Source of the DNA: Dimorphilus gyrociliatus
Taxonomy: Eukaryota > Animalia > Annelida
Length of the DNA: 64,000 bases
Direction of reading: 5' to 3'
Assembly: GCA_904063045.1 (NCBI GenBank)
Contig: CAJFCJ010000001.1
Coordinates: 3,038,001 to 3,102,000 of the forward strand
How positions within the stretch are numbered: the first letter of the stretch is position 1; each line of letters opens with the position of its first letter. Made by a program: the position numbers and the translations under genes. The notes beneath the pieces are model-generated. The model saw nothing but the letters and a program-made list of their open reading frames with translations. It had not been told where the DNA came from and searched no databases. Shown one piece after another: positions 23,701-47,700 of the stretch.

Positions 23701-26700
23701 TGTCCCTCTGGATATAGCTGCAGTGGCAATGATCTAGCTACACCGAATGCAGCTTGCCCAGCAGGTCACTACTCCTCAACTGGAGACGTGGACTGTCACG
23801 AATGCCCTGCAGGGAAATATTGTCCAACAACACAGTAATAACATAGTCAAGTTTTAAAAACGTTTAATGTGTCTTTACGCATTTTTAGGATAACAGCACC
23901 AATTGACTGCGCTCCAGGAACTTACTCCTCTGCTGCCGCTACAGCCTGCACAAACTGTTCACCAGGAAAAGCATGCCCAAATCTGGATGGTTCTGGAATA
24001 TTAGATTGTACCCCCGGACAATATTCATTGAGCAGTAAGCAAAGATTTGTAACTAAAAATAGTGTAGTAACAATTACTTTTCACTAGATGCTATTGCATG
24101 CACAACTTGCTCACCTGGATATGCCTGTCCAAACACTACAAGGCCAATTGTTATCAAATGCTCTCCTGGATTCTATTCCATTGGAGGTCAAGACGAGTGT
24201 ACACCATGTACACCAGGAAATGCGTGTCCTGACATAGAAAAAGCGACTATTAATCCATGTCCAATAGGAACATATGCAGTAGCAAATCAGTCTACATGTA
24301 CTACATGCCCAGCAGGTTTTGAATGTCCGGATATCGATCAAGATACAAAGTAAGAACTATAGAGAAATGAAAAAGATATATTTAAACTTGTTATTTTACT
24401 TAATTCACTAGGAAACCTTGTGAAGAGGGATATTATTCATTTGGAAATCAGGAAAAATGTACCTACTGTCCAGAAGGATATAGCTGCCCCCACAAACATA
24501 AAGGACCTCAGCTATGTGATCAAGGTTTTTATAGCGAAGCAAAATCCGTTAATTGCACCGGTTGCGAACCCGGCTTTGCTTGTCCTGAACCTCAAGCGAC
24601 AAAGAAAAGCGAATGTGCACCTGGAACTTACTCTTCAGGAGGAGCTATTGTATGTTCTCAATGTGACCCTGGGTTCAGATGCAAAATGGGTTCAACCTCT
24701 CCTAGACCTGATGATGGTATTTGTGAGAAGGGTGGATGGTGCGATGGGAAAGCCTTTTACGCCTGCCCATCAGGAACTTACAACCCTTTAAATGGTTCCT
24801 CCAGCGAAACTGACTGTAAACCGTGTCCTCCAGGATTCTTTTGTACTGGACCAGGAGAAATAGATTATTCTGATAAACACTGTCCACCTGGACACTACTG
24901 TTTGCAAGGAACTACAATTAGCACAAATTTTCCATGTCCAGGAGGAACATTCTTTGACAAGGTAAATGCTACAAGTAAAAACGATTGCCTACCTTGTCCA
25001 GAAGGTTTTTACTGTCCACCTGGAAATTCAGTTCCAATAATCTGTCCTGCTGGCTTCTGGTGTACTGCATCTCAAAGTACAGGAGTCCAGAATGCTTGCC
25101 CTCTAGGAACATTTAGCAGTCTAACAGGCCTTAAAAGTAATTAATTATTAATATTAAAGATCAAATTTTTTTCTAATATGAATAATTTTTGCAGATTGGA
25201 CTCAGTGTACAGACTGCACCGTTGGTCATTATTGTCCGTTTGGAACTGAAACAGAACCAAGAATTTCACCATTGCCTTGTCCATCTGGAACTTATAATCC
25301 TAATGATAGAACTGGAGATATTTTAAATTGTAGAAGATGCGATGCAGGATATTCTTGCCCAAGAATTGGCCAACATAACGTAACTGACCCATGCGAGGAA
25401 GGATATTACTGTCCTAACGGCACAATTACACCTGGTGAATTTCCTTGTCTGCCTGGAACTTACACGGATCAAATACATTTGAGATCAGCAGATGAATGTT
25501 CGCCTTGTCCCGAAGGACACTACTGTGATTGGGGAACAGCAAATTTCAGCAGCTCGAAGCCGCCAAGACCTTGTAAACAAGGTCATTATTGCCCTGCACA
25601 AACAACAGCTCCAGATAGATTTCCATGTCCAGCGGGAACATATACAAGTCAGTCAGATTTAGCAAGAGCTGATCAATGCACACCATGTACTGAAGGAAAC
25701 TATTGTCTTGGAGGTGAATCCAGTCCAAGTGACATTTGTCTTCCTGGGCATTATTGCCCCACAGGATCAAGATTTGCTACTGAATTTGCATGTCCGAATG
25801 GAACTTATAATAAAAATTATGGAATGAAAAGTCTTGCCGATTGCTTAAATTGTACTCAAGGACACTATTGTGAGGAAGCATACGAATTACCAAAAGATTG
25901 TCCAGAAGGAACATACATGCCGTACGGAACAGAAGTTGCAACCGGTGACTTCAAAGGTCCTGGAGGGCCAGCACAAAGAGAATTTGCTTGTCTTGACTGC
26001 CTTGCTGGCTACTTTTGTGGCGTTGCAGAAGTTACACCACAACCATGTGGTAAAGGGAAGTATTCAAAAAAAGGACAAAAGCAATGCGTTATATGCGAAA
26101 TTGGGTAAGATCATTTCCGTTCCTACATATATATATATATAAATACTCAGTAATTTCTACTCTTTAGTCATTATTGCGATGAGGATGCTACGTCAGAAGA
26201 AGCTATGCTTAAGAATAAGAGGTGCCCAGCAGGACAGTTCTGTCAAGCTGGATTACAAGCTTTAGGGGATGCTGTTGATTGCTCTCTTGCTAAATATTGT
26301 CCAGAAGGTTTATATTTAAATTTAAAATTAGAATACAAACATAATTTTGTTTTTTATCTTTCCAGCAACTAAGGAAATGATTAATTGTCCAGTGGGAACA
26401 TTTAACCCTACAACGGGAAAGGGTAACAAAACAACCGATTGTCTTCCATGTACCGAAGGATATTATTGTCTGGAAGGAAGTTCAAGTGCAACTGGTGCTT
26501 GTGAAAAAGGCTTTTACTGTCCAAGTCCAATACCAAACCCTTATAGTAATGATCCACCTGAAATTGGCTCTTACGGTCCAAAACAAGAACAATGTCCAGA
26601 AAAAACCTACACTGATGTCACAGCTACTAAGAAACTGGGTGACTGTAAAATTTGTCCTGCTGGTTATTATTGTACTAGAGCAAGTTCAGCACCAATAGAT

Positions 26701-29700
26701 TGTCCAAGAGGATATTTTTGCGTTGAAGGAGTAGAAAAACCTGCTCCTTGTCCAATTGGCCGATACGGCAACGAATCTAATGCCGACGCTTTAGAGAAAT
26801 GTCCGCTTTGTGATAAGGGATGGTACTGCGATGCTCCAGGTTTGTTACAACCAAGAGCCCCTTGCGATCCCGGTTATTTATGTCACGAAGGCGCCAAAGA
26901 ATCTGGTCCCACAGATGGCGTAACTGGTGAAATTTGTCCAGCTGGAGGATATTGTACCCTTGGTTCTTATGTGGCTAAGAATTGTCCATTGGGTACATAT
27001 TCGAACGTCACTGGTGCTGTGAACGAATATGATTGTTTTGATTGTGATCCTGGATATTACTGTTCTGCAGTATCTGGAGGAGAACCTACTGGATTGTGCT
27101 GGGGAGGATACTATTGTACCGGAAGAGCGAAAACTCCCAGACAAAACTATACTTTGCCAGGTTATTACTCACCAAATGGCTCGGTTGCTCCCAGAGAATG
27201 TGAAATAGGCTCATATCAACCGTACGAGGCTCAGCCCGATTGTATAACATGCGAACCAGGATTCTACTGTCCTGAAAAGAAGATGGATCACAACATTGCT
27301 TGTCCAGCAGGTAAATTCTGTGGAAATGGTAGCTATGTACCTCAAGATTGTCCACCAGGAACGTTTTCAAATAGAACTCATATGACACACGTAGAAAATT
27401 GTACAGATTGTCCACAAGGATACTATTGCCAAGATAGAGGTATAACAGAACCAACAGGAAAATGCAAAGCGGGTCATATATGCTTCCAAAATGCTCTGAA
27501 CGACGACCCTGTCTTCAATGATGATGTGTCTAGTAACAAAACTATTGTTACTTACGGTGATGTTTGCGCACCAGGCCATTATTGTCCAGCTGGAACCGCT
27601 TTGATGATTCCTTGTCCGAGAGGGACTTATAATCCAGACAGGGGAGGTATCTCAGAAGCGTCAGCTTGTAAACCCTGTCCCGCTGGCAGCTACTGTAATG
27701 GAACCGGTCTCTCAGGTGTTTCAGGAGCATGTGATAAGGGATACTATTGTGTAGGCAGAGCTTTTCTACCAAATCCAAATGACAATACTACAGGATTTAT
27801 TTGTCCACAAAATCATTTTTGCGTAGAAGGAAGCCAAGTACCTAAAACATGTCCTCTTGGTTATAGTGCAAATTTTACAGGTTTATCAGAGTGCACATTG
27901 TGCCTAGCCGGGTATTGGTGTTTGCCAGGAGAATACCCAAGATTATGTCCCAAGGGATCTTATTGTCCAGCTAGTACAAATTCCATTCCTCTTACGATAC
28001 CAAAAGCTTGCCCAGAAGGTACGTATGGAGGACGAGATGGCCTAGAGAAGTCAGATGACTGTAGCAGTTGCGATCCTGGACATTATTGTGTAGGAACTGG
28101 ACAAACTAACTCTACAGGATTAATTCAAGCTGGACATTGGTCAACAACAGGCTCAACAACATCAACTCCTGCTGAAGATGACTCTGTAATTAGAGGATTA
28201 TGTCCAAAAGGTTACTACTGTCCAGAAGGTAGTAGTAGACCAGTTTCTTGTCCATCAGGTACTTTTGGTTTTGGATGGATGTATAAGACTGTCGACGATT
28301 GTAATCCTTGCGAAGGCGGTAAATACTGTCCCGAAACGAATATGACAACAAGCGGTCCAGACTGTTATGCTGGTCATTATTGCTCATCTAAATCACCAGT
28401 TCCTGATCCTGTTAATCAAACATATGGTAGCGAATGTCCAACAGGTTTCTTCTGTCCTCTTGGCTCAGCGACACCTGAGCCTTGTCCAGCTGGAAAATTC
28501 CAAAATGAAACGAGACAGAGCGTGTGTAAAGATTGTCCTCAAGGATTTTATTGCCCGTTAAATACAAGCAATCCATTCTCTTGTCCCTCTGGTTACTGGT
28601 GCATTGCCAATCAACAAGAAGCATTTTTAAATCCATGTCCAATCGGAACCTACAACAATCTTACAGAAAGGCGAACAGTTGCAACATGTCGATCATGTCT
28701 TCCGGGTCATTATTGTGCCATTCCAGGTTTAAGTGAACCTACTGATGAATGTGATCCTGGATGGTATTGTCTAACTCGATCAACTGCAGCTCAACCAGCT
28801 GTCGCCGCTGAAGGAGGAAGATGTACTGCTGGTAATTTCTGTCCAAAGGGAAGCTCACAACAAATACCTTGCACTCCTGGAATGTATTGTAATAATGCAG
28901 AATTAGCAGAACCAGCTGGTAATTGTTCGGCCGGCTACTATTGCTCTGCCGCATCGACAACACCAACTCCAACAGATGGTGTTATGGGTAATTTGTGCCC
29001 AAAAGGATTCTATTGTCCCAGTGGTAGCGAAAGTGGTATAGGATGTCCACCTGGTTCAATGCTTAACGTTACTGGAGGCAAATCAATAGATGAGTGTTTT
29101 AACTGTACTAAAGGATATTATTGCAGTGGTTATGGAAATGATGATCCAACAGGACCTTGTGATCCTGGTTATTATTGTCCAACAGGAATATCTCTTCAAA
29201 ATCCATCTGAATACATTTGCCCTATTGGTCACTTTTGCGTAGGGAATAATCACGAACCAGTAAGATGTGTTTCAGGAACTTACCAAGATCAAACAGGACA
29301 AAGCCAATGTAAAGAGTGTCCGAAAGGATTCTTCTGTGATAACACAATTGCGCCAGTCGTTCTCTTCAGTAGTTCAAAATGTCCAGAAGGTCATTACTGT
29401 CCACCTGGTACGAAACATTCAACGGAATTTAGATGTCCATCTGGAACATATAGCAATTTCACCGGATTAGAAAATGTAACAGACTGTCTTCCATGTCCAG
29501 GAGGTTTCTACTGCGATGCTGAAGCCCAGATATCATATTCCAAAATTTGCCAAGAAGGGTATTTATTACAATGTTACGGTTTTACTTGTTTTAATTTTTA
29601 ACTCTACGGAATTTTATTTTTAGATACTTCTGCAAACAATACGCCAAAACAGCTACACCAACCCAAAATACAGATGCAAACGTATGCCCTATAGGTCATT

Positions 29701-32700
29701 TCTGTCCTTCAGGCACAAGTCAACCAAAGAAATGCCCTATCGGAACTTTTTCGAGTGCAACCCTTTTAACCAAAGAATTAGACTGTCTTAATTGTACAGC
29801 TGTACGTTAAAATTGTCTATTATCTAAAGTTCATTTCTAATTTTGATAATTCTTTGCAGGGATACTACTGTGCTGATTTAGGTAGAACAGAACCAAATGA
29901 TCCTTGTTCAGCAGGATACTATTGTCCTGTGGGATCGAGTAGTCCCACGCAAATTGATTGTCCCATGGGATACTATTGCGTTAATGGCAGTGCAGATCCA
30001 ACAAAGTGCCCTATAGGAACTTTCTCAAACAGAACGATTGTTAAGGCTAAAGACGACTGCCTTAAATGTCTTGGTGGATGGTATTGCGACACTGAAGGAT
30101 TGATCACACCAACAGGTCTTTGCAGTGAAGGATATTTCTGTCCTGAAGGATCAAGTTCAAGACAACCAGCTGCTACTCCATGCCCAGTTGGAAATTATTG
30201 CCCAGAAGGATCAGCAGCTCCATTACCTTGTCGAAACAATACCCACGTCAATCATACACATGCAGTACAGTGCTATAATTGTCCTGCTGGTTTCTATTGT
30301 GTTAAACAAGGGTCCTCTGAAATATGTCCAAAAGGCTACTATTGTCCAGCTGGCACTGGCTTAGACTGGAAAGCCTGTCCAAGAGGATCATATAGTGATG
30401 TTGAAGGATTATATGAAAGATCTCAATGCAAACAGTGCCCGCCCGGAAAATACTGTGACGGAGAACATCTCGCGACACCATCAGGAGATTGTGGTGAGGG
30501 GCACTTTTGTACTTATGGAGTAGATCAGAAATACCCAACGGGAATAAATCAAACTGGACCATTTAATAATACTTGCTATGACGACAGAGAAATTGGATCA
30601 GGAGGAATATGTCCAGTCGGCCATTACTGTAGTCAAGGTAGTTTTGAACCCACGCCTTGTGCCAACGGAACCTACGCCAATAAACCAGGTTCTGCTTCAT
30701 GCAACATATGTCCTCAAGGTTATTGGTGTCCACTTGGCAGTGTCAACTTTACAGATTATCCATGTCCTAAAGGATACTATTGCCCAGTTGGAACCAAGTG
30801 GATCAATGATAATCCATGCCCAGCAGGAACGTTTAATAATAGGACAATGAGATTCAAATTAGATCATTGTTTAGCTTGTCCAGGAGGAGAATATTGTAAG
30901 GACGAAGCATTGTCTGAAACATCAGGACTCTGTGATGCAGGATATTATTGTAATATAAACTCAACCACAGCTACACCGTCAGGAGGTTATATGGGAGATA
31001 TTTGTAAAGCCGGGTACTACTGTCCAGCAGGATCTGATCATCCTTATCCTTGCAAGCCTGGACACTTCTGTTCAGGTGACGGACTTAATTATACTTCTGG
31101 CCTATGCTCACCTGGTTACTTCTGTACAATTAAAGCAACAATTGCTAATCCAACCGATGGTAACATAACTGGAGATATATGTCCAACGGGTGCGTACTGT
31201 CCTCAAGGAAGTTATGCTCCTCTACTCTGTCAAGTTGGCACATACTTGAATGGAACTGGAAATGATGAAGCAGCCGATTGCCTGCCCTGCACACCAGGAT
31301 CTTTCTGTCGTGGAAGCGGTAAGTATTAAAAAATTCATACTAGAATAGATAAAAGACTAATTTAATTAATATGAACAGGTAATGCTATACCAGACGGACC
31401 TTGTGCTGCTGGTTGGTATTGTCCTCCAAGCCAGAGTGATCCTAGACCTGTAGGATATAATTGTACTTTGGGACATTATTGTCCTGAAGGAAGTGCCCAA
31501 CCAGTCAGATGCTCAAGTGGAAAATATCAAGATGAACTTGGATCAACAACATGTAAAACATGCCCGGCTGGTTATTACTGCGATTCAACTTTCGACCCAG
31601 TGGTACTCTACAACAGCTCTTATTGTCCTAAAGGTAAGGTTATATAAAAATATAGTTACCGAAATATCAATTTTTCTTCACATATCAGGCTACTACTGCC
31701 CAATTGAAACTAAGTATGCAAAGGAATTCCCGTGTCCTATATCTACTTTCTTGAATGTTACTCACAAAACAAGTGAAAGTGATTGCTTCCCTTGTAGAGG
31801 AGGATACTACTGTGATCAAACGGGACTTGCGGAGCCGACTGGACCATGTGACGCAGGTTATTACTGTCACCATAGCTCAAACAGCTCTTCGCCAAATCTA
31901 GGAGAACTCGGAGACGAATGTCCACCTGGTTTCTATTGTCCGGAAAATTCGGTTGCTCCTCAAGCTTGTCCACCAGGGACATACAGTTCAGCTATGAAAT
32001 TGAAATCCATTTTAGAATGTACCAACTGTACTGGTGGTAAATACTGCTCTAAATGGAACATGACAGTCATAGAAGGAGATTGTCAAGCCGGCTATTATTG
32101 TCCTAGTGGAGCTGATAAAGCAGACTTTATAAGTTGTCCGGCAGGATCATACTGTCCAACAGGAAGCATAAATCCAACATTCTGCCCAAGAGGAACATAT
32201 TCAAACTCTTTAACTCTAACTGCAGTAGAATTATGTAACAACTGTACAACTGGTTTCTACTGTCCACAAGAGGGACAGACTGATGCAACTCTCACTTGCT
32301 GGGGAGGATTTTATTGTCCTCCTGGTCAATTTGATCCTAATCCAGCAGAGTTCATATGTCCTGTTGGTCTTCATTGTCCAAATGGAAGTAGCACTTACAA
32401 GCAATGCCTACCAGGATACTTTACAAATAGCACTGGAAATAGTGAATGTCAAATATGTCCAGCTGGCTACTACTGCTTACCAGTTCTTCCACAAAATGCT
32501 TCTCTCAATGCTCAGTTGTGTCCAAAAGGCTATTATTGCCCTGAAGGAACGGAACTGAACTGGAACAGCTGTCCAAGAGGTACATTCAGCAATGTTGAAG
32601 GTCTAAAAACGGTTACTGAGTGTACTCCTTGCACCGGAGGAAAGTACTGTGACGGTATCCATCTTGTCGATGTAAGTGGCGATTGCAAAGCTGGTCACTA

Positions 32701-35700
32701 CTGTGAATCTGGTTTAGATAGATTAAATCCAATCATTAATAATAATTCAGGAATAGCAACAGATTGTCCAACAAACGCATTCTATACTGGCATAGGAGGA
32801 TTATGTCCAAAGGGACATTATTGTCCAACCGCATCAGACAAACCTCTGCCATGTGAACCGGGTACTTATGCTGATAATGAAGGACAAGCTTTGTGTACGT
32901 TATGTCCTGAAGGATACTACTGTTTGGCCAACTCAACAGATTTTGTAAATAACCGCTGTCCAGCTGGCTATTATTGCAAGAATGGAACAAAACATGCCTT
33001 CGAATTTCCCTGTCCAGCTGGAACATATAATCCTTCCGAGTTAGGAACTTCAGAAAATAATTGTCTAGAATGTACAGGAGGATTGTATTGTCAAGGAACT
33101 GGAAATCCACAACCAACTGGAAACTGTAGCGCAGGCTGGTATTGCACAAAAGGTTCTGACGATCCAAAAACAACTACCAAAGGAGGAAAGTGTCAACCAG
33201 GATATTATTGTCCGCTTGGTTCTAAGAGTCCTAGTCCATGTCCCCCTGGTGAATACTGCGAAACTGAAGAGCTAGCTGCACCAACAGGTAATTGTAGTGC
33301 AGGTTATTATTGTACTGGAGCCAGTGAAAAGAGAGATCCTGTAAACGAAAGTTATGGAAACAAATGCCCAGCAGGATTCTACTGTCTTGAAAAATCTGAA
33401 GTCCCTACTCCCTGTTCTCCTGGGACATATAGTCCAACTGAGGGAAATACACTTGAAGCTGACTGTCAACCTTGTTCTTTTGGAGATTATTGTCAAGGAT
33501 ATAATCTAACTCAAACAAGTGGAAATTGCACAAGAGGATATTACTGTCCTCAAGGACAACAAGTAAATAACCCTTTCATATGTACAGTAGGTCACTACTG
33601 TCCAGAAAGTTCTGCTAACCCAATCTTATGTCCAAGTGGGTATTATCAAGATCAGACGGGACAGTGGACATGCAAACTATGTCCATCAGGATACTATTGT
33701 GACAATTCAACAGGCGTTGTTGTGATTAATGACAATATCAAATGTCCGAAAGGTTATTATTGTCCTCCTGGTACAAGACACTCTCAGCAATGGCCTTGTC
33801 CTGTTGGAACATTCGGTAACTTAACAGCTTTTAACTCAAGTATGGATTGTACTCCTTGTTCACCTGGAAAGTATTGTAGTAGCGTTGGACTAACAGAACC
33901 AACTGATTTCTGCGCTGAAGGATATTATTGTAGACTCTACGCTGAAACTTCAACACCGAACCAAGCAAGCAATGCCAATATATGTCCACAGGGATCCTAC
34001 TGTCCAAAAGGCAGTGAACAACCCATACCCTGCATACCAGGTACTTACGGAGCATCAACAGGTTTAGCAAACGTGACTGGCTGTACGCAATGTACCCCTG
34101 GAAAGTATTGTGAATCAAGTGGACTATTGGCTGTTGAAGGTGATTGTCACCAAGGTTACTATTGTCCTCTAGGTTCTAAATTGAGACGAGAAATAATTTG
34201 CCCAGTTGGTCATTATTGTCCTACTGGTTCGGCAACTCCTGAAAGATGTCCATTGGCTACTTTCAATCCATACCTTGGCTTAAATAGCTCAGATCAATGT
34301 ACCAGTTGTACTGCTGGAGATTATTGTGGCACGCAAGGATTAAATGCAACAACAGGACCTTGCGAAAGTGGTTATTATTGTCCTACCGGTCAGCAATCGT
34401 CTAAAGCTATTGTTTGTCCAGTAAGACATTACTGTCCGATTCAATCGTCCATCCCACTACCATGTCAGAATGGAACTTACATGAATCATACTCAAGCTGC
34501 GGTATGCGACATTTGCCCTGCAGGATTTTACTGCTTGGGTGGAGAATTGACTGATCGATGTCCGGAAGGTTACTATTGTCCAGAAGCCACTGGCAATAAC
34601 TGGCAATCTTGTCCACTAGGAACCTATAACAACGATACAGGTTTGAAAATGATAAGTGAATGTAAACCATGTCCAGGCGGTCAATACTGCAACGATTATC
34701 CTCCTGTGAATCCCAGTGGTTTGTGTGCACCAGGCTACTTCTGTGAATATGGAGAAGATAGATCAAAACCAACAGGTGGAAATATAACTTACGGTATAAA
34801 CGGAAGCTGCCTACTATCTGGAATAGAAACAGGCAAAGGAGGAATATGTACACCAGGTCATTATTGTCCCGAAGGAACAATAGTTCCACTACCATGCGGA
34901 GCTGGTACTTATAGTAACAGAACTGGACTTCATCAATGTCTACAGTGTCCTGCCGGCTACTATTGCGAAGCAGGTAATTATATCGCAAAGTTTCTACCAA
35001 ATCAATTTTAAATGACATAAATAATTTCCTCAGAGGCTGAAACTTATCTCGATACACCATGCCCAACTGGAAGGTACTGTCCACCTGGAACTAAAATGGC
35101 CAATGAATTCTTATGTCCAAGTAAGTTGCTATTATCAAAGTTATACTAATCTATTCTAATGTCCACATTTCAACAAATTAGTCGGTACCTTTTATAATCA
35201 AACGCATGGCAAAGAATTATCTGATTGTCTTGCTTGTACCCCTGGAATGTATTGCGAAACTACTGGCCTTCCAGCTCCAACTGGAAAATGTGCTCCAGGT
35301 AACAACTTATAAAGCTTATAATGAATAGCTTTTGTATAATTTTAAATTTCTTCCTGATAGGCTGGTACTGTACAATCAATGCTACACAAAGAATGGAAAC
35401 TGTACAAGGAGGCCAGTGTCAACCAGGATTCTATTGTCCTGAAGGAACCCATAAACCTCTGGATTGCGATCCTGGAACATACTGTGAAACTGCTGGTCTT
35501 GATTCACCAACTGCTAATTGTTCAGCAGGATATTACTGTACTCTGAGAGCAATTATTCAAAATCCAACAGATGCTACCACAGGAGATATATGCCCTGTTG
35601 GACACTTCTGTCCGATAGGATCTTCAGTTGCCACCCCATGTCCAACAGGAACATTCTTGAATGCTACTGGACAGGTAAAATTTTAATTAATCGTTAAGTG

Positions 35701-38700
35701 CCATCTAATAATTTCATTTATATTACTTTCTTCAAAGGATGATGTCGGTGATTGTGTAGATTGTACTTTAGGAAAATACTGCCCTGGTACTGGTCGTCAA
35801 CTACCAATGGATGACTGCGATCAAGGTTTCTACTGTCCTGGAAAACAAAATGTTTCCTCTCCACAAAGCTATATTTGTCCTGTTGGACATTATTGCCCAA
35901 GAGGTTCACCTGAACCAATTCGATGTCAGAACGGAACATATGAAGACAGATTTGGATCTTGGATGTGCAAGATTTGTCCTACTGGCTACTTCTGTGATAA
36001 CACAATGAATATTGTTATTTTAGATAATACAACCACAATATGTCCAATGGGAAGTTACTGCCCGGACGGAACGAGTTATAAAAATGAATTCTTGTGCCCA
36101 ATTGGCACATTTAACAATAGAACAGGATTAAGAGAAGAATCCGCCTGTACCCCATGTATTGGCGGCTACTATTGTCCAACGCCTGGAATGGTGACAGTAA
36201 CAGATCTTTGTGATGCAGGATATTTCTGTAAACAAGGAGCCAGAATCTCCGCTCCCAATCAAGGTTTAGATGCTAACATCTGTCCAGTAGGATTCTATTG
36301 TCCTCAAGGAACTGCTGACCCTGAACCATGTCCCAAGGGAACTTATAATAATAGAACAGGTTTACAGAAACTCCAAGACTGCATCGACTGTCCATCGGGA
36401 GAATATTGTCAAGAAATTTCCATGATACAAACCAGCGGATTGTGCTCGGCAGGTTATTATTGCGAAATCAATTCAAACAGTTCTCACAGAACAATATGCC
36501 CTGCCGGTTATTATTGTCCGGAAGGTAGTCCATCTCCAACTGCCTGTCCTAGAGGAACATTTTCTACTAGTTTAGGACTTGCAAATAGTAGTCAGTGTAC
36601 TCCTTGTATTCCTGGCTCTTATTGTAACGGTACAGGCTTAAACGGACCAACATCTATCTGTGATGAAGGATATTACTGTCCAGGCGGTAACTCTGAGCCA
36701 AACCCTATTGCTACACCATGTCCAATCGGTTTACATTGTCCTTCTGGATCATCAACACCCGTGCCATGCCTACCAGGAACATTTGCTAACTTCTCCCAAG
36801 CAGCTAGCTGTGCTGAATGTCCAGGTGGATTTTATTGCGTTCCCGAAGAAGTTATTCAAGGAAATTCATCAAGCGGTCATCGGCTGTGTCCGAGAGGATT
36901 TTATTGTCCCGCTGGAACTGGAAGAAACTGGACTGCTTGTCCACCTGGAACTTTCTCCAATGAGCTCGGATTAGAAGATGTGGGTCAATGTACACAATGC
37001 ACAGGAGGATTCTATTGTGATACAACCAACTTAACTTCTCCAACTGGACCTTGCTCTCCTGGTTACTACTGCACTTCAGGAGTTAATGTTCCAACGCCAT
37101 CTACTGGTCACCTGGGCATAGGAGGCGAATGCCCGACTGGTAATCAATGTCCTGGTACGACAGTTGTTCCAGAAAATTGTCAAGCTGGATATTATCAAGA
37201 CATTACAACGCAAAGTTCATGCAAGATTTGTCCAGAAGGTTATTTCTGTGTTGCCAACTCTACAACTTATACTCATCAAATTTGTCCTTCTGGTTATTAT
37301 TGTCCAACTGGTACAAGATTTAACATTCAATATCCATGCCCTCCTGGTACTTTCAATAACTTAACTGGCCAAAACAACGAAAGCGCTTGTTCACCATGCA
37401 CACCTGGACACTATTGCGAAAATAACGGACAGTCGGAGGTTACTGGAAAGTGCCATGCTGGATTTTATTGCACTATAAGATCTCATCTAGCAGAACCTTC
37501 ACTATCTAGTATAGGTGGCCGATGCTCTGCAGGAGAGTACTGTCCAATCGGTAGTTCAGCTCCAATTGGCTGTGATCCTGGTAAATATTGCGATGTAGCT
37601 CAAATGGAAGCACCCAGAGGACCTTGCTCACCTGGATATTATTGTATTGCTAATTCGACAACATCACAACCGACAGGCGTTAATGGCGATCAATGCTCAC
37701 CGGGCAATTATTGTCCAGAGGGCAGCTTTATGGAAACTCCATGTGATCCTGGCTTCTATTTGCCAAGTTCTGGAGCGTGGAATATTTCTTTCTGCATAAA
37801 ATGTACATCTGGAAAATTCTGTAATGAAAGTGGATTAGCAGCTCCAAAAGCAGATTGCAATAGAGGTTTCTTTTGCCCCGAAGAACAAAAAGTCAAAAAT
37901 CCGAGTTCTTATCCATGCCCGAAAGGATATTATTGTCCAACCGGGTCTTCCACTCCAGTTATCTGTCCATCAGGATACTATCAAGATGAGGAAAATCAAT
38001 GGACTTGTAAAGATTGCCCCGCAGGATATTTCTGTGACAACTCCTTGGAACCGGTGGTCAACTACACCGCATACGAATGTCCAAGAGGATTCTACTGTCC
38101 AGCAAATACAAACTCTTCCAACGAATATCCTTGCCCTGAAGGTACTTTTAATAATATAACAACTCTAGGATCTGAAAGCGAATGTCTACCTTGTATTGGC
38201 GGTTTCTATTGTCCTGGTGGAGCTATAACTTATCCATCAACTCCATGTAGTCACGGCTATTTCTGTAAGAGTGGAGCGAAAACATCAACACCAACAGAGG
38301 GATTAAATGCCAATATTTGTCCTGTAGGACATTACTGTCCCGAACAGACCGCTGAACCGATTAAATGTCCCGTTGGAACAATGAGTAATGCAGCTGGAAA
38401 TAAGAACGTAACAGACTGCCAACCATGCACCAAAGGTTATTACTGCGAAGAACTTGGACAAACAGTAGTCACTGGCCCATGCTTACCAGGACATTATTGT
38501 CTAGAAGCATCAACCGTTAACAACTCAATTATCTGTCCAATAGGAAAATATTGCCCAATAGCGACTCATACTCCAATCAACTGTCCAAACGGAACTTGGT
38601 CTAACGTTACAAATCTTGAGGCTGAAAGCGATTGTACTCCATGTCCAGCCGGTTATTATTGTCAAGCAAACGGTCTAATCGAGCCAGAAGGTCTTTGCCA

Positions 38701-41700
38701 ACAGGGATATTATTGTCCAATCGGTTCTAATGTTCCCAACCCAATCACATGTCCAATTGGTTTGCACTGTCCTGTAGGATCTCCTGAGCCAAGGTCTTGT
38801 TTGTCTGGTTATTATACAAATACAACTGGTATGAGTGTTTGTTTGGATTGCCCCCCAGGATTTTACTGTTTACCAGAAAACGTTACAGCCACAAACCCAG
38901 TTCCTGGATATCATGATTGCCCAATGGGCTACTACTGCCCGAATACCACTGGCTTAAATTGGATGCCATGTCCAAAAGGAACTTTCTCTAGACAAACAAA
39001 CCTCTTTAGGGTTGAGCAATGTCAAGATTGTGCACCTGGAGTTTACTGCGACAAGGAAGCAGCTGTTAACTACACAGGCCAATGCTCTCCTGGCCACTAT
39101 TGTGAAGGTGGAGTTGATAGACCTAACCCAAATAATGCTGAAGTAAATAGCACTTATCCTGCTTCATGTCCTCTCCTAGGAGGTCACACTGGTGTTGGTG
39201 ATGTTTGTCCTAAGGGTTTCCATTGTCCTTTGGGCAGTGCCCTTCCTACACCCTGTCCAAGTGGGTACTATCAAGATGAAGAAGGCAAGGCAACGTGTAA
39301 AAACTGCCCTCAAGGATATTATTGTACAGTCAACAGCACAGACTTTTCCGATAAAATATGTCCATCAGGTCATTTCTGCCCTCTGAACACTAATAGTGCC
39401 TTCGAGTTCCCTTGCCCTGAAGGAACTTTCAATAGCCTAGAAAATCAAAAAAACATATCAGCCTGCAAAAATTGTACTCAAGGAAATTACTGTATGGGAA
39501 CAGGATTAAGTGCACCTACAGCAAATTGCAGTGAAGGCTGGTACTGCAGAGAAAGATCGACGAAACCAATGCCAGTAGATGCAGATGAAGGAGGTGAATG
39601 TCCAACAGGTACATTCTGTCCTGGAGGATCATATGTACCAACACCCTGTACTCCTGGAAATTACTGTCATATTGCAGGACTTCACGAACCTTCAGGTCCA
39701 TGTACACAAGGATATTATTGTACCTTGGGAGCATCTTTACCCAATCCAACAGATAATATCACAGGAAATATTTGTCCAATGGGCCATTATTGTAATATTG
39801 GATCCCCAGCACCAGCTCCATGTGAAATCGGATACTATTTAGACAGTACAGGAAATGATGTCGTTAGTGATTGTAAGATCTGTACTGAAGGCAAATATTG
39901 CGGAAGTGATGGTCTGTCAAACCCGACTGGAAATTGCTCCAGAGGTTTTTACTGTCCACCTGGTCAAAAAGTTAATACACCAGGTAACTACACCTGCCCA
40001 GAAGGGCATTACTGTTTAGAGGGAGTTTCTGAACCTTCTCCTTGTGCCAGTGGATATTATCAGGTAGGAAAGTAGGTTAGTCCTCATATAAGCATTACCC
40101 TTTAATTTTTTTAAAGGATCAACCAGGAAAATGGGATTGTAAAGATTGCCCACCAGGATTCTACTGCAACGCAACACTAGGTCCAGTTGTTTTTTATGGA
40201 GCATACCAGTGTCCAGAAGGTTTCTATTGTCCAAGCAGAACCGAATATGACAAGCAATACCCTTGTCCATATGGAACATTTAACAACAGAACAGGTAATA
40301 ATATAGACAAGAAAGTGCTTGATTAATGTTGTATTATTAACCAAAATTTTTTCATAGGCCTAAGTCAAAAGAGTCAATGTACACCATGTATTGGAGGATA
40401 TTCTTGCGACGAAGAAGGCATGGCATATCCTGAAAGACTCTGCTCATCTGCTTACTACTGTAGAACTGGCTCCAACTCAACAACACCAAATATGGGCTCT
40501 ACTGCAGACTTATGTCCAGCCGGTTCTTACTGTATTGAAGGAACTGATGCTCCAGTACCCTGTCCCGAGGGAACTTATAGTCCTAATGAAGGGTTACACT
40601 CAGAGAATGAATGCTTAAACTGTACTGGAGGTTATTTCTGCAATTCAACTGGTTTAACAATGGTCAGTGGCAAATGTGAAAGTGGATTTTATTGTACCGA
40701 AAGAGCTCACCTATCAACTCAAGAGCTATGCCCAATGGGCTCCTATTGTCCCCTTGGATCTCAATATCCAACCGACTGTCCCAATGGTACATATAGTAAT
40801 GCAACTGGATTGAAATCACAAGTCCAATGTACAGATTGTACCGAAGGTTATTATTGCAATGGAGTTGGTCTTGTTACTCCAAGTGGACTTTGCAAGCCTG
40901 GATACTACTGCCCTACAGGATCAGAAGTTGAGACACAAATAATATGTCCAATTGGAATGCATTGTCCTGAAGGAAGTTCAGAGCCAAAGAAATGTCTACC
41001 TGGATCATATACCGACTATAAAGGAGCAGCTACCTGCATAGAATGCCCCGAAGGATATTATTGTATTCCTGAGTTAGTTATTGCAGCTAATCTGGCATCA
41101 GTCAAACATCCTTGCCCAGAAGGCTTTTATTGTCCTAATGGAACAAGTTATAATTGGAAACCATGTCCAAGTGGAACATATAGTAATGTACAACTTCTAA
41201 GGAACGCTAAAGAATGCACACCATGCGATGCTGGCTACTATTGTGGTGGAACCAACCTTACTCAGCCAACGGATAAATGTTCAGCTGGCTACTACTGCGT
41301 TTCTGGCATAGATAGACCAAACCCAAGAATGCTAAATGAAAGCCATTGTCCAGAAGGAACTGCACATCCCATGATAGGCCATATTTGTCCAACTGGTCAC
41401 CGCTGTCCAATTGGATCAATTACACCTTTGGGTTGTGCACCAGGAAAATATCAAGTAAATTTTCTTGTTATAAATATACTTTTAAGTGCTAATTAATTAT
41501 AATACTATACAGAATTTGGAAGGACAAGATACCTGTTTAGACTGCCCGAAGGGTTATTACTGTTTGGCTAACACATCGCATTACCTAAATAATTCATGTC
41601 CATCGGGTAAGAAGATAAGATTAAAACATTTGGTTATTTTACCATTTTCTGCTACAAATTATATTAATTTTTTTTAGGTCACTACTGTCCCCTTAATACA

Positions 41701-44700
41701 CCTGATCAATTTTCTAACCCATGTCCTGCGGGAACATTCAACAATAAGACAAATCAATATTCTTCATCATCTTGTTTGGCTTGCACTCCTGGATACTACT
41801 GTCAAGGAACTGGAAATACAGATCCATCTGGTAAATGTAATCCCGGTTGGTATTGTATCAATGCTTCGTCATCAGCTCAACCAGCAGACAATACTGGAGG
41901 AGAGTGTACACCAGGAAATTATTGCCCTGAGGGTTCATACGAACAGACCCCATGTACAGAAGGAAAATATTGTAACTCTTCTGGATTATCTGCACCTGTT
42001 GATTGGTGTGACGGCGGGTGGTATTGTCCCAATGGTTCTAGTTCCCCAAGAGAAATTATCTGTCCCATGGGTAGCTTCTGTCCAAGAGGAAGTAAACTGC
42101 CTGATCCATGTAGAAATGGAACATATGGAAATGCTACAGCTCTTAAAGACCAAGAAGAATGCAGAGAATGCGACCCAGGCTTTTACTGTAATGAGATTGG
42201 AGCGATAGCAGTTTCTGGTCAATGCGATAGAGGCTTTTATTGTCCACCTGGTCAAAAGACACCAACCCCATACATTTATAGATGTCCTGCAGGTCACATG
42301 TGTCAAGTAGGAACCTATATTCCACAAAGATGTCCAAATGGAGAATATCAACCTGTTGAAGGCAAATGGAGTTGTATTTCTTGTCAAGCAGGCTATTATT
42401 GCGATAATGGTCCAGCACCTATTTCATCATTAGCTAACTATACTTGTCCAGAAGGACATTATTGTCCAACAGGTACTAAAACAGCAAGACAGTATCCATG
42501 TCCTCCAGGTACATTTAACAACTTGACCAAATTGGAAAATGAGGGACAATGTCAGCCATGCTTACCAGGAAAATATTGTCAAAATAGTGGATTGTCAATG
42601 CCAGAGGGAGATTGTTTCGCAGGGTAAGCAGACATTAACTTTAGTTAAACAAATTTACATTTGGCAATATCTCAAACTTAATTTCTTAATCACAGATTCT
42701 ACTGTAATGGAAGCACCATTGAACCAAATCCACCCTATGCAATCTGTCCTATAGGAAACTACTGTCCAACTGGAGTCTATGAACCAATACCTTGTCCACC
42801 AGGTTCATTAGCTCCGTCTACAGGAAATAAAAATGTTTCAGCTTGCGAGCCATGCGCTCCTGGCCATTACTGTACACCTGAAAGTAATAAAGTTGGAAAA
42901 GCTGAAGAATGTGATCCAGGATATGTCTGTATACGCAGTGCCGAAGTTCCAAAACCAACTGACGGTGTGACAGGCTACGTATGCCCAACCGGAAATTTCT
43001 GTCCAAAAGGTTCTGGTAAAGAACAACCATGTGGATTGGGAACATTTGCAGATGTTGTAGGCCTAGGTAAATATAAAAAAAACTGATACAACAAAAAAAA
43101 AGCTTAATTGTATTTAACACATATTGCATATTAATTAATGATAACAATGCACTCCACAGCAAGTTATAGTAAGTTTATCAGCTGCATCCTCAGTAACTAA
43201 TTGTTTTGTAAAAACCCAAACATTTACTCTCATTCCTTAATGTTTAATTAGTAGTCGTTCGTGCAATTTATAAGAATTTTTTTTATAAAAAAAATAGTAA
43301 TGGAATTATTATTTCATTGACTTTTAGGTGAATGTAAAGTTTGCTTGGCTGGAAGAACTTGCCCAGAAATGGGAATGAATATCACAAATCCCTGCCCAAC
43401 CGGTCATTATTGTCCGAATGGTACTTACGATTCTGGTGTTCCATGTCCTATCGGATCTTATAATCCCCATGAGGGAATTGCCGAATCTTCCCAATGTCTA
43501 GACTGTCCTAGTGGATTATTCTGTAATCAAACTGGTATTGATACACCTTCTGGAAATTGTTCAGCTGGTTATTGGTGTGTATCTGGTGCTGAACATCCCG
43601 GACCTAATGACGGAACCAATGGACTTTGTCCAGTTGGTCATTATTGTGAAGAGGGTACTAGAAATGCAACTGCTTGTCCTCCAGGAACTCTTAATCCACA
43701 AGAAGGTGGTAAGAGCTTGTCGGATTGTAGACCATGCACAGGAGGTTACTATTGTGCCGATTATGGTATGACTATACCTTCAGGACCATGCGATAGAAGA
43801 TATTACTGCCCAGCAATTGCCAACATTTCTAACCCAACACCAGTTGATTTCAAATGTATACCTGGTCACTTCTGTCTAAATGGAACAGTTCATCCCATAC
43901 CATGTCCACCTGGAACTTATCAACCGAATGAACTTATGGATGCTTGTATACCTTGTCCTGCTGGAACCTATTGTTTGGCAAACACAAGCGTTCCTTTAGA
44001 ATGTCCAGCATACCACTTTTGCCCAGCAGGAACAATTGAACCTCAAATATGTCCTAATGGAACATTTACAAAATCAACTATTCGCAGCCTTACTAGTGAC
44101 ACGCAATGTGAAATGTGCGAAACTGGAAAATATTGTGTCGATGGTAGAGAAACTGGCGATTGTGCAGCTGGATTCTGGTGTAAGAAAGGAAATTGGCAAC
44201 CAACTCCCTTCTCAAATGAAACAGATTTAGCCATCGGAGAACCTTGTCCATATGGCTATTATTGCCCAACGGGAACTCTGAAACCAGTACAATGCCCAGA
44301 TAATCGTTTCATAGACAAGAGCGGAGCATCACACATTGGAGAATGCGGCTACTGTCCTGCAGGAAAAATCTGCGCCATTGGTGGTATTCCAAAACCATGC
44401 TGGCCGGGCCACTTCTGCCCATATAACGATACTATTTATAAATGCAACAAAACAACATACTTGGATGAATTTGGAGGAAAGAGTCCAATGGATTGCAAAG
44501 TATGCCCAGCTGGATATTACTGCTTTAAAGAGGGAATGACCAACTATTCTGTCAGCCCTTGCCCACCAGGATTTTATTGTTACGAAGCAACATCAAGCCC
44601 AATTCCATGTCCAGCTGGAACTTACAGATCTGAAGCTGGCGCCGAAAATATAACTGAATGTACTTTATGTCCTGCCGGTTATTTCTGTCCCAATGTTAAT

Positions 44701-47700
44701 ATGACCGTAAACGGTACACAATGTGATAGAGGAATGTTCTGCCCTCCAGGAAGCAAATTACAAACGATCTGTCAAGCAGGATATTATTGTAATAGAAGTA
44801 AAACTCAACAGCCTTGTCCGCAGGGATATTATTGTGAAGCCGGATCTGAAACACCAACGAGATGCCCATACGGTCACTACTGTCCAAGAAGCTACTCATC
44901 TAATGGAAACTTAAGAGGAGCGATGACACCAATCAAGTGCCCTCTTGGATACAAGATGTATGAGGGTTCTAACAGGACCACTTTTAGCGAGACTTGTGAA
45001 CCTTGCATGAAAGGATGGTATGGTAATCATCCTGAAAGAAGAGACTGCTATCCATGCAGACCAGGTGTTGTATGTAAGGAAAGGGCAATCAGTGACGTTC
45101 CTTTGAGTAACAATTCAGCATCCTTCGGAGTTAACGTTACTAGATCATATCCATGTCCAGTAGGACATTACTGTCCAAGGAATAGTTCACTACCTACTCC
45201 CTGCCCAGTTGGAACTGCTAATAAGAAACAATACCAAGGTTCTATTGATAACTGTATACCTTGTTCAAAGAATCATTTCCAACCCTATGAGGGACGTAAA
45301 GCTTGCTATTCATGCGGATCTAAAGCCACACAACCAAAGACAGGACAGCCAACTTGCATATGTAATGGAGTAGGAAGAGATTTCCAATTTTCCGACAGAG
45401 ACTGCCCTTGTAAAGTTGGATATAGAGTTATGCTCGGAAGAGAAACTGACTGTGTCAAACACGTCTATGACAATTGCGTTGAAGGAGAAACAAGAACTCA
45501 AGATGGTCTGTGTTACACAGCTAAACAATGGGAAACTCATTGCACAAACAACGTATGTGGAGGAGTAGAAAAATATGCAGGTGTAGAGAAATTGATTGGC
45601 TTATGCAAATGTATTACAGAAGATATTGATGATATATGTGATCTTAATTGTCGATTGAAACAAAGAAATTCTATACAATTACATTGTCCAGAAAACTTGG
45701 CGCCATTTATTTCAGTAAAAAATCAAAATGGACAACCTCTTGCCGAGTTCAAAGTGGAAAATCTCGGAAAAGTTATTAACAGTCAAGATGCTTTTGGAGC
45801 TGATACTTGTACTAAGAAGGGAGCTGAACCGGAACCTATGCATTTACTAGAATGTTCAAGCGATGGTTTCTTCGGTATTTATGAACCTGAAGGCGAACAA
45901 TTGAAGAGCTTATTCTTAAACAATTACAAGGGCATAGTTAGCTTGAATCAAACTCAAGGAGGTAAACACGGCTATACTTATTCGAGAAGAAAAAGAGATC
46001 TTATACACTCTAGGCGTAGAAGAGCGGCATCAACCCTACCTGGGTCGGTCAATTCTGGAGTTTCAAACCCAACTGTTTGCTTGAAATATGGAGAAAGAAT
46101 GCTTTGGACAATCACTAAAGATCATTACCCAGTTTACGACAGAAATAATCTATTCAATACCAATGAGAAATTCGATTTCGGAGGCTTTAGAAAGTTAATA
46201 GAAAAGAAGAGTCAACTATCCTCTTCGGCTACCTTGTTTGCCTACAGATTCGTTGATCCTGGAGCGTATGCTTTCTACTTAAGTTCGAATGTCTATAAGA
46301 AAATGTACATCCGAGTTATGGCTGAAGATGCTCAGTGCACAGAAGATGGTCCATTCTTCCCTACAACACCACGATATGTTATTCAGAATGGCTTATCTAT
46401 TGATCAAGATATTCTCAGAGCACCAGATTGGGTTGTCATTGTGGTTCTTTTGGCTCTGATGATAGCCGCTTTCATTATTCTTATTATTGCGCTTATCTTA
46501 TTTAGGAAATATGGATGGAATAAGTCTATGTTTATTAACCCTAAATACAGAAGAGTTACGAGGAAATATAATATGGAAGACTATTCTAGTAAGGGAGCAG
46601 CTGTCAGCGCTGCTAAGAAGTATCATAGACTGGGTCTTGCTCAGGAGGATGATGACGATGATACTACTTTGGCAATTGCCGGAAAAACAACTGGTGACGA
46701 ATACTGGGATTATGACAAACAAGTTGACTTGGAGGCTTTCTCATCACCTAAATTATACGAAATTCTGTCTGGTCAAAGTAGGGCAGTTACAAGAGATCTT
46801 AGCAAACAAAAGGAAGAAGCTAAGAATATGTATCAAAAGGTTAATAATCAAGTTGATTCACTTAAAGGACTGTGGTTGGCTAAATTCAATTTGGATCCAG
46901 TTAGAGCTGGTTTGGCCACACATGAAGATGTAGCTGCATACGAACTGAAATTGCATGAACTTGAAAGAGAATTAGAACGACGTAAGGATCTAGGTTCTAA
47001 ATACGAAAATGTTCTCGAAAGAATTCGTGAATTACAAGATACTGATGAAGAATTAAGACTCAAACATCAAGTTGCCTTTGATAGTCTAACTAGGGAAGCC
47101 ATAAGACAGATTGATCAACATGTAGAAAGACTCCAAAGAGGAAAGGTTATCAAGAGTAACGGTGAATTTGATATGAATCAGCATCAGAGCATTTTAGGCA
47201 GAATCCAATTATTAATTAGCAAAGCTGATGATGAAATAACTACTGAGTGTACCAGACTCGGAGTTAGTGGAATATTAGGTGATGGAACTGGAGCACCATT
47301 AATCGGACCAAATTCTGAACCTCTCAAGAAAAATCAATTGCTAACAGAAGAAGGATCAGTAAGAGCAAAGGATATATTATTCGAGGATCCTATAACAGGT
47401 TTGATTAAGATCAGAAAAGGTTCTAAAATGCTTACAGCCGATGGTGATATTGTTAATGTTCCAAGTAATTATGTACTTAATACGCACACTGGTAAAGTTC
47501 TTCCAATTGAAGTTGCCGCTTCATTCGACCCCGTTGCTTACAAATTGGTAGTTACAGTGGATAACATAAGCTGTGATACTCGTCACTCAGAACCACTTTT
47601 ACCGTATATACCAATAACCTCTTCAACTCCTATTAAATTTAAACAACCAGAAAACCGAAGGAACTTAAGACTTGGCGAGCCAATAGAAGATCCCGAGAGC

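What the first reader, a model, noticed from the sequence alone, without database searches (positions are those of the whole stretch)
29267..42630. Titin-like super-repeat: ~680-690 aa period repeated six times plus a partial seventh
Seen: two independent landmarks recur with constant spacing. The first is 'C..G.YQD..G...CK.CP.G..CD.....VV' at ~29267, 31505, 33627, 35920, 37963, 40045 and 42325. The second is 'W..CP.GT.S....L.....C' at 30367, 32561, 34601, 36929, 38960 and 41155. After subtracting introns, spacings are all about 2,030-2,080 nt (677-694 aa). The copies are highly diverged in DNA and mostly differ in intron positions, although the introns at 29560 and 42624 fall at the same phase-2 Gly codon of the unit. 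Inference: an ancient block duplication kept at fixed length, suggesting a molecular ruler or periodic binding to a partner lattice.
Basis: seen in the sequence. Interest (0 to 1): 0.75.

Follow-up and report, generated by a model that had tools for sequence, protein, structure and literature searches.

The report
Six-fold 685-residue super-repeat, giant surface protein
A roughly 9,900-residue membrane protein of a small marine worm carries six complete, in-register copies of an ancient 685-residue cassette of disulfide hairpins. The pattern is real and old, but the number of copies differs between species, so it looks like a length-adjustable rod rather than a proven molecular ruler.

Summary
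One intron-bearing gene (window 22259-53678, + strand, about 9,890 aa in my 26-exon model) encodes a cysteine-rich ectodomain of about 7,550 aa, one membrane span and a tail of about 2,320 aa.

Model residues 2180-6290 are six full units of 680-693 aa. Each has 72-73 Cys, and the units are 41-48% identical to each other. They are flanked by a half unit upstream and a 239-aa partial unit downstream. In-register self-matches reach 42-47% identity, against 28-40% out of register. Synonymous sites between units are saturated.

A species about 85% identical keeps exons 9, 13, 17 and 23 gap-free, one for one.

The cassette belongs to the family, not only to this gene:
- 2 copies in the ichthyosporean Chromosphaera
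- about 3 in Intoshia
- about 5 in a second paralogue of this genome (contig C9)
- about 8 in that paralogue's orthologue P0024

The predicted fold is a hairpin rod. Its closest solved structure is the Chlamydomonas mastigoneme protein MST1.

The "ruler or lattice" reading has no support. Copy number varies, and the invariant residues are almost all scaffold (Cys, Gly, Pro, Tyr).

The scan had already noted a giant gene of this family on another piece of this genome (s1-080330), but not the super-repeat.

The parts
22259..53678 (+). One giant gene: 26 exons in my model, about 9,890 aa. The 5' end is not found; exon 1 begins at or just after a splice acceptor and no signal-peptide exon was located.
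   Evidence: All exon frames are open with GT-AG introns of 48-81 nt, plus one of 261 nt. Coding GC is about 41% against 27% outside. Homologues of 5,000-7,800 aa have the same order of parts.
28195..29265 (+). Partial unit ahead of the array (unit profile positions 317-694; model residues 1822-2179)
   Evidence: hmmsearch domain, score 353. The same kind of half-unit precedes the array in Chromosphaera, Intoshia, Lineus and P0024.
29266..31509 (+). Unit 1 (687 aa, 73 Cys), with introns at 29559-29623, 29802-29859 and 31319-31378
   Evidence: It pairs with the first unit of the Lineus longissimus protein P0036 (SH-aLRT 98-99).
31510..33628 (+). Unit 2 (688 aa, 73 Cys), with one intron at 31634-31688
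33629..35923 (+). Unit 3 (683 aa, 73 Cys), with introns at 34974-35033, 35121-35181, 35299-35360 and 35675-35737
35924..37963 (+). Unit 4 (680 aa, 72 Cys), without introns, inside the 4,326-nt exon 17
   Evidence: Structure model: pLDDT 88.5, a rod of short beta-hairpins.
37964..40042 (+). Unit 5 (693 aa, 73 Cys), without introns, inside exon 17
   Evidence: Sister to unit 4 in the tree (SH-aLRT 94).
40043..42330 (+). Unit 6 (681 aa, 73 Cys), with introns at 40064-40116, 40295-40357, 41455-41512 and 41607-41677
42331..43380 (+). Partial seventh unit (profile positions 1-239), with introns at 42624-42695 and 43067-43327
   Evidence: hmmsearch domain, score 182. The intron at 42624 is in the same column and phase as the one at 29559.
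43381..46428 (+). Rest of the ectodomain: a segment matching profile positions 116-519, further hairpins out of the 685-aa register, then a membrane-proximal region poorer in Cys
   Evidence: The same segment follows the array in Chromosphaera, Anneissia japonica and P0024.
46429..46503 (+). Single membrane span (WVVIVVLLALMIAAFIILIIALILF)
   Evidence: The only long hydrophobic run in the model. It is conserved in P0001, P0002 and P0019.
46504..53678 (+). Cytoplasmic tail of about 2,320 aa: a conserved DE[FY]WDY motif just inside the membrane, repeated VPILG...PVGG motifs, long coiled-coil-like charged stretches, and a C-terminal globular domain with an H-A-L-A-H motif (exon 25, 52264-53417)
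   Evidence: The tail search finds Dreissena (39-43% identity over about 2,500 aa) and many vertebrate proteins labelled uncharacterized. Pfam finds nothing.

Best explanation
The region is the central part of the ectodomain of one giant single-pass membrane protein.

What is shown:
- The ectodomain is a chain of about 360 small disulfide hairpins of the Ephrin_rec_like (GCC2_GCC3, TNFR-like) kind.
- A fixed order of 37 hairpins, in two related halves of about 415 and 270 aa, forms a cassette of about 685 aa.
- This cassette is present six times in full and in register, with a partial copy on each side.
- The cassette predates animals.
- Its copy number has changed by gain and loss of whole cassettes in different lineages and paralogues.
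- Individual copies then persist for very long times, without homogenisation and almost without indels.

What is inferred:
- The cassettes arose by in-register unequal crossing-over.
- Cassette length is held constant by the indel intolerance of the disulfide ladder.
- The ectodomain is a stiff, N-glycosylated rod. By analogy with the roughly 11 Angstrom disulfide spacing in MST1, each cassette would add about 40 nm and the whole ectodomain would reach about 0.4 micrometres.
- Copy number therefore sets how far the rod reaches from the membrane.
- The long coiled-coil tail ties the rod to something inside the cell.

My confidence figure covers the structural and evolutionary account. For the reading as a length-tunable, membrane-anchored extracellular filament I would give about 0.3.
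For: - Pfam Ephrin_rec_like scores above its cut-off in the three largest Cys-rich exons (exons 9, 17 and 23).
- Self-BLAST lags and identities show the register, as do the sliding-window peaks.
- The unit profile finds six full copies and two partial flanks.
- Each unit has 72-73 Cys, and 72 Cys columns are invariant.
- Synonymous sites between units are saturated.
- The 85-86% identical relative has gap-free orthologues of exons 9, 13, 17 and 23 on one contig.
- Full collinear units with the same flanks occur in Chromosphaera P0025 and P0026, Intoshia P0028, Lineus P0036, Anneissia P0051 and P0024, in different numbers.
- A second paralogue on contig C9 has about 5 units, and three of them pair with single units of P0024 (SH-aLRT 90-98).
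- The AlphaFold2 model has pLDDT 88.5 and pTM 0.44 and consists only of short strands.
- The best Foldseek match is the mastigoneme protein MST1 at E 3e-21, followed by ELAPOR1, TNF receptors and the ephrin-receptor cysteine-rich domain.
- The 11 Angstrom disulfide ladder of MST1 is described in PMC10602792.
Against: - No expression, localisation or partner data were available here.
- I could not read coordinates from the model, so the rod lengths are only an analogy. The low pTM means the overall shape (straight, curved or folded back) is unknown.
- The unit tree has long terminal and short internal branches. An AU test does not reject a single origin of all six window units (p 0.19), so the timing of the duplications is uncertain.
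- The N-terminus and signal peptide are missing from my model.
- Copy numbers in other species come from gene models that may be truncated or mis-joined.
Confidence: 0.8

Rival explanations
1. Molecular ruler or lattice binder. The 685-aa period is selected because each unit matches the repeat of a periodic partner, or because the whole protein measures a fixed distance, as titin and nebulin super-repeats do.
For: Unit length is tightly kept at 680-693 aa here and about 654-716 aa in other species. There are no indels in 3,452 aa against the 85%-identical relative. A few position-specific non-scaffold residues are invariant: D7, K15, V30, N64, W335, L349 and Q671.
Against: Copy number ranges from 2 to about 8 among homologues and differs between the two paralogues of the same genome. 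Of 166 invariant columns, 149 are Cys, Gly, Pro or Tyr. Glycosylation sites are mostly not position-conserved. No partner is known. Unit-length constancy is explained by the fold and by in-register recombination.
Confidence: 0.1
2. Neutral by-product. The array is real, but neither its copy number nor its total length is under selection. Whole-cassette gains and losses drift, and only the folding of each hairpin is selected.
For: Copy number varies widely across lineages. The invariant residues are scaffold residues.
Against: All six units are intact, with every Cys column kept after synonymous saturation. The array is unchanged, gap-free, in the 85%-identical relative. Units stay positionally orthologous between P0024 and the C9 paralogue at about 48% identity. 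Long retention of every copy argues that each copy is needed.
Confidence: 0.25
3. Artefact. The periodicity comes from assembly duplication, or from my having joined several neighbouring genes into one model.
For: The gene model is mine and was not checked against transcripts. The 5' end is missing.
Against: Units are only 51-55% identical in DNA, so there is nothing for an assembler to collapse or duplicate. Units 4 and 5 lie in one uninterrupted 4,326-nt exon. All 25 introns keep the frame. An independent assembly of a relative has the same exons. Homologues of 6,000-7,800 aa exist in other species.
Confidence: 0.02

Closest known systems
Titin and nebulin super-repeats
   Same: A hierarchical repeat: small modules in a fixed order form a larger unit, which is itself repeated in tandem at near-constant length, in a giant elongated protein.
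   Different: Those proteins are intracellular, are built from Ig/Fn3 domains or 35-residue helical modules, and have periods matched to known filament lattices. Here the modules are extracellular disulfide hairpins, no lattice partner is known, and unit number varies between homologues.
Chlamydomonas mastigoneme protein MST1 (PDB 8WA2, 9B4H, 8TX1)
   Same: It is the best structural match to the unit model (Foldseek E 3e-21). It has a ladder of disulfide-bonded, ephrin-receptor-like cysteine-rich modules forming a stiff extracellular filament on a cell surface (PMC10602792).
   Different: According to that paper, MST1 has nine Ig-like domains and a polyproline-II tail and polymerises. It reached no E<=0.01 sequence match in the PDB search. 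The worm protein has a membrane span, a 2,320-aa cytoplasmic tail and no Pfam match other than Ephrin_rec_like.
Pfam PF07699 Ephrin_rec_like (GCC2_GCC3) repeat proteins: SVEP1, SCUBE, ELAPOR1/2, thyroglobulin type-2 repeats, ephrin-receptor cysteine-rich domain
   Same: The same hairpin module, matched by the Pfam model above its cut-off and by fold matches to ELAPOR1, EphA2/EphA4 and thyroglobulin.
   Different: Those proteins carry a handful of such modules among other domains. Here about 360 modules make up nearly the whole ectodomain, organised in a 37-module cassette.
Unnamed pan-eukaryotic family of giant cysteine-rod membrane proteins (Dreissena DPMN_185080, Intoshia A3Q56_00182, Chromosphaera Nk52_evm8s371 and evm45s621, Fabomonas, Diphylleia, Kipferlia, Chilomastix, Barthelona). 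Vertebrate models of the same family are machine-labelled "uncharacterized", "zonadhesin-like" or "MEGF6".
   Same: The same order of parts: hairpin rod, membrane-proximal region, one membrane span and the conserved DE[FY]WDY motif. Where the tail is present in the model it also has VPILG...PVGG repeats and a C-terminal H-x-x-A-H domain. The window gene is a member.
   Different: The number of full cassettes differs. Deep protist members (Fabomonas, Diphylleia, Barthelona, Kipferlia) show only parts of the cassette in other arrangements. I found no functional study of the family.

Membership tests
Ephrin_rec_like / GCC2_GCC3 repeat proteins (PF07699) | Match to the Pfam model above its gathering score | tested here: met
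   25.0, 31.4 and 29.2 bits against a cut-off of 23.1 in exons 9, 17 and 23. The best matches lie on the landmark-1 hairpins.
Ephrin_rec_like / GCC2_GCC3 repeat proteins (PF07699) | TNFR-like disulfide-hairpin fold | tested here: met
   The AlphaFold2 model has pLDDT 88.5 and only short strands. Foldseek matches MST1, ELAPOR1, TNF receptors, EphA2/A4 and thyroglobulin.
Titin-type super-repeat acting as a ruler | Higher-order unit of several modules in fixed order, repeated in tandem in register | tested here: met
   Six full units, 41-48% identical in register against 28-40% out of register.
Titin-type super-repeat acting as a ruler | Period matched to a periodic partner structure | not testable with these tools
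   No partner is known. The invariant residues are almost all scaffold.
Titin-type super-repeat acting as a ruler | Number of units, and so total length, conserved among orthologues | tested here: inconclusive
   The exons compared with the 85%-identical relative are unchanged. More distant homologues and the genome's own paralogue have 2 to about 8 units. Some of those gene models may be incomplete.
Mastigoneme protein MST1 | N-terminal Ig-like domains, C-terminal polyproline-II helix, secreted polymerising subunit | tested here: not met
   Pfam finds nothing but Ephrin_rec_like. There is no sequence match to any PDB chain. The protein has a membrane span and a long cytoplasmic tail. Only the cysteine-rich rod is shared.
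Unnamed pan-eukaryotic giant cysteine-rod membrane protein family | Hairpin rod, then one membrane span, then the conserved DE[FY]WDY juxtamembrane motif and a long tail ending in the H-x-x-A-H domain | tested here: met
   The tail search gives Dreissena at 43% identity and 100% coverage, and vertebrate proteins at 26-34%. The motifs are visible in P0001, P0002, P0019 and P0020. Juxtamembrane matches occur in Chromosphaera, Fabomonas, Kipferlia, Chilomastix, Diphylleia and Barthelona.

The most novel reading that the evidence does not exclude
The family is an ancient eukaryotic, membrane-anchored extracellular filament (a surface or ciliary "hair" or spacer). Its reach is set in steps of about 40 nm by the number of 685-aa cassettes, and its coiled-coil tail couples it to the cytoskeleton. 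This would be an integral-membrane counterpart of the mastigoneme that has escaped study because gene models break it up. All named homologues come from organisms with cilia or flagella, but I did not test whether the family is absent from lineages without cilia.
Probability: 0.15. Interest if true: 0.75.

Novelty: new member of a known kind. Interest (0 to 1): 0.45.

Why it matters
Super-repeats are usually discussed for muscle proteins. Here the same hierarchical design appears in an extracellular disulfide-hairpin rod of a giant membrane protein family. The family spans ichthyosporeans, metamonads, ancyromonads and animals including vertebrates, and I found no functional study of it. The cassette gives a simple handle for work on the family: a profile that counts units, places homologues and exposes truncated gene models. 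It also leads to a clear experiment: measure the length of one unit, then change the number of units. If the rod reading is right, the family would be a natural example of length set by cassette number on the cell surface.

Tried and rejected
I could not fetch the relative's 33.6-kb contig or the Dreissena locus, so I could not compare intron positions or full unit counts there.
- No database tool was given the joined spliced protein. Exons were searched one at a time by reference. The joined translation existed only inside local scripts, for coordinates, self-comparison, the unit alignment and the unit profile. That profile was also run locally against proteins already fetched.
- The sequence search of the Protein Data Bank found nothing at E<=0.01.
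- The ESM Atlas search with the C-terminal domain gave only weak, unrelated hits.
- Pfam finds nothing in the tail or in P0002 and P0035 beyond Ephrin_rec_like.
- Literature searches for the family gave nothing relevant.
The one I opened only lists it in a table. I did not test whether the mouse gene is a member.
- A first self-BLAST of the homologues returned nothing because of my own set-up; I repeated it with chunks. Lags near 1,000 aa in that run are partly an effect of the chunk size and were not used.
- Rejected as explanations: assembly artefact, recent duplication or gene conversion (DNA identity 51-55%), and membership in the MST1 family.
- The window is not human. It has about 27% GC outside genes and introns of about 60 nt. 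The genome is 77.9 Mb in 349 contigs. That fits the earlier notes' Dimorphilus gyrociliatus and the published median intron of 66 bp (PMC7854359), but I did not prove the species.
Full report
**The gene.** The window has about 27% GC outside genes, and about 41% GC between 22 and 54 kb. On the + strand this stretch is a chain of long open frames with about 10% cysteine. I joined them with GT-AG introns of 48-81 nt, plus one of 261 nt. All 25 junctions keep the frame and none leaves a stop. The model has 26 exons (22259-53678) and about 9,890 residues. Its 5' end is missing, because exon 1 starts at or just after an acceptor.

The protein has three parts:
- an ectodomain of about 7,546 aa with 783 Cys and 164 N-x-S/T sites
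- one hydrophobic span at 46429-46503
- a tail of about 2,320 aa with coiled-coil-like stretches and a C-terminal globular domain

Pfam recognises only Ephrin_rec_like (PF07699), above its cut-off.

**How the spliced model was handled.** The joined protein was never sent to a database tool. Exons were searched one by one by reference. The sequence is not human.

**The observation.** BLAST of the exon translations against each other, mapped to cumulative coding coordinates, gives 42-47% identity at lags of 680-690, 1371-1377, 2053-2057, 2738-2742 and 4123 aa. The best match is 1,105 aa at 44% identity (1,078 bits, lag 1371.5). Matches at other lags give 28-40%. For matches of 200 aa or more, bits per residue are 0.81 in register and 0.54 out of register. 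Sliding unit 4 along the ectodomain gives peaks at 2184, 2872, 3552, 4928 and 5608, and a weaker one at 6288.

A profile of the units finds six full copies at residues 2180-6290, of 687, 688, 683, 680, 693 and 681 aa. It also finds a partial copy before them (profile 317-694) and one after them (profile 1-239). The rest of the ectodomain matches only in pieces, out of register. The six units are 41-48% identical in all pairs. Each has 72-73 Cys, and 72 Cys columns are invariant. The array as a whole spans about 6.9 unit lengths (28195-43380).

**Inside the unit.** A unit is 37 hairpins of four recurring kinds in a fixed order. It has two related halves. The lag taken modulo 686 shows secondary peaks near 270 and 412 aa, and a landmark-1-like motif recurs 418-430 aa into units 4-6.

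**Introns.** The introns at 29559 and 42624 share alignment column 99 and phase 2. The other 12 introns of the array are at 12 further positions, several of them at the Gly of a C..G|xYC hairpin. Units 4 and 5 have no introns.

**Age.** DNA identity between units is 51-55%. Fourfold third positions are 33-46% identical, against 36% expected from base composition. Synonymous sites are therefore saturated, and there is no sign of recent gene conversion.

A species whose proteins are 85-86% identical keeps orthologues of exon 9 (P0233), exon 13 (P0206) and exon 17 (P0183), all listed on a 33,663-nt contig along with P0001. These align without a single gap over 1,063, 970 and 1,419 residues. The orthologue of exon 23 (P0001) has only a few gaps. 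Each relative protein matches its own unit at about 85% and the other units at about 45%. The array was therefore fixed before that split, and its units evolve independently.

**The cassette in other genomes.** A full-library search with unit 4 found 11,701 proteins at E<=0.001, many of them 5,000-7,800 aa long. Running the unit profile on them locally gave the following:
- two collinear full units in each of two Chromosphaera perkinsii proteins
- about three shortened units in Intoshia linei
- one full unit plus parts in the crinoid Anneissia
- about one unit, in pieces, in the frog Discoglossus
- at least one and a half units in a truncated Lineus model
- three or more units in P0027
- seven to eight units of about 705 aa in P0024

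These arrays sit between the same flanks as here: a half unit before, then profile 1-240 and profile 119-518 after. Fabomonas, Diphylleia, Barthelona and Kipferlia have pieces of the cassette in other arrangements. Independent self-BLAST of P0024, P0025, P0026 and P0027 shows their own periods of 668-705 aa.

The worm's own genome (77.9 Mb; the window is C1:3038001-3102000) has a second paralogue on contig C9, at about 110,000-148,350 on the minus strand. It has about five units and is most similar to P0024, at 38-54% identity over the exons where P0024 is the best match.

**The unit tree.** In the tree, C9 units pair one to one with P0024 units: a with u2 (SH-aLRT 98), b with u3 (94), c with u6 (90). 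P0024 u4 and u5 are a pair of their own. Window unit 1 pairs with the first Lineus unit (98-99). Window unit 3 groups with two P0027 units (90-91). Window units 2 and 6, with the pair of units 4 and 5, form one clade (94). An AU test does not reject a single origin of all six window units (p 0.19), so the order of events stays open. The pattern is still clear: whole cassettes are gained and lost now and then, and then kept for a very long time.

**Fold.** AlphaFold2 on unit 4, using an alignment of the window's units and short homologues, gives pLDDT 88.5 and pTM 0.44, with nothing but short strands. This is what a locally well-defined, globally flexible or elongated rod looks like. Foldseek against the PDB puts the Chlamydomonas mastigoneme protein MST1 first (8WA2, 9B4H, 8TX1; E about 3e-21). 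ELAPOR1, TNF receptors, the EphA2/A4 cysteine-rich domain and thyroglobulin follow. The sequence search of the PDB found nothing.

In MST1 the cysteine-rich modules form a disulfide ladder with about 11 Angstrom spacing (PMC10602792). By that analogy, about 36 disulfides per unit would give roughly 40 nm per cassette and about 0.4 micrometres for the whole ectodomain. This is an inference, not a measurement.

**Interpretation.** Three things are shown:
- a real, ancient, in-register super-repeat
- a cassette older than animals
- variable copy number, with long-lived individual copies

Three things are inferred:
- The cassettes arose by unequal crossing-over.
- Their length is constant because a disulfide ladder tolerates no indels.
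- The rod's reach depends on cassette number.

The ruler or lattice idea has nothing for it beyond the constant period. Of 166 invariant columns, 149 are Cys, Gly, Pro or Tyr. Glycosylation sites are mostly not position-conserved. Copy number differs even between the two paralogues of one genome.

**What is known.** The family is named only by machine labels: "uncharacterized", "zonadhesin-like", "MEGF6", "notch-like". I found no study of it. It reached the same view of the family, but it did not mention the super-repeat.

**Verdict.** The functional reading is unsupported. This is a new example of a known kind of architecture, in an unstudied but widespread protein family.

Noticed in passing
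G000:C9:110000-148350 (minus strand; loci L007-L012): A second giant paralogue of the same family in this genome. It has about five cassettes of the same kind and is orthologous to the unnamed 7,808-aa protein P0024.
   Followed up: partly
window 52264-53417 (+), exon 25: C-terminal globular domain with an H-A-L-A-H motif. The motif is conserved as H-[AS]-[LM]-A-H in Dreissena P0002 and in the GC-rich unnamed proteins P0019 and P0020. There is no Pfam match and no useful Atlas hit.
   Followed up: partly
window about 47900-49000 (+), inside exon 23: The cytoplasmic tail carries several copies of a short motif (VPILG..I....G.V.PVGG). The motif is also present in the Dreissena and unnamed protist-like homologues. 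Its function is unknown.
   Followed up: no
window 43067-43327 (+): This is the only long intron of the gene: 261 nt against a median of about 62 nt. It lies just after the partial seventh unit. I did not check it for a missed small exon.
   Followed up: no
vertebrate homologues P0014, P0016, P0022: Some bird and turtle gene models fuse the tail of this family to NF-kappa-B inhibitor zeta ankyrin repeats. This suggests that the vertebrate gene lies next to NFKBIZ and is mis-joined there.
   Followed up: no
window 14031-14768 (-): Open frame with mariner/Mos1-type transposase HTH and partial DDE matches, all just below the Pfam cut-offs. It is probably a decayed transposon.
   Followed up: no
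window 6687-7232 (-) and 56858-57274 (+): Neighbouring genes: a NACHT-domain exon upstream (27.7 bits against a cut-off of 26.7) and a sodium:neurotransmitter symporter (SNF) exon downstream (E 2e-56).
   Followed up: no
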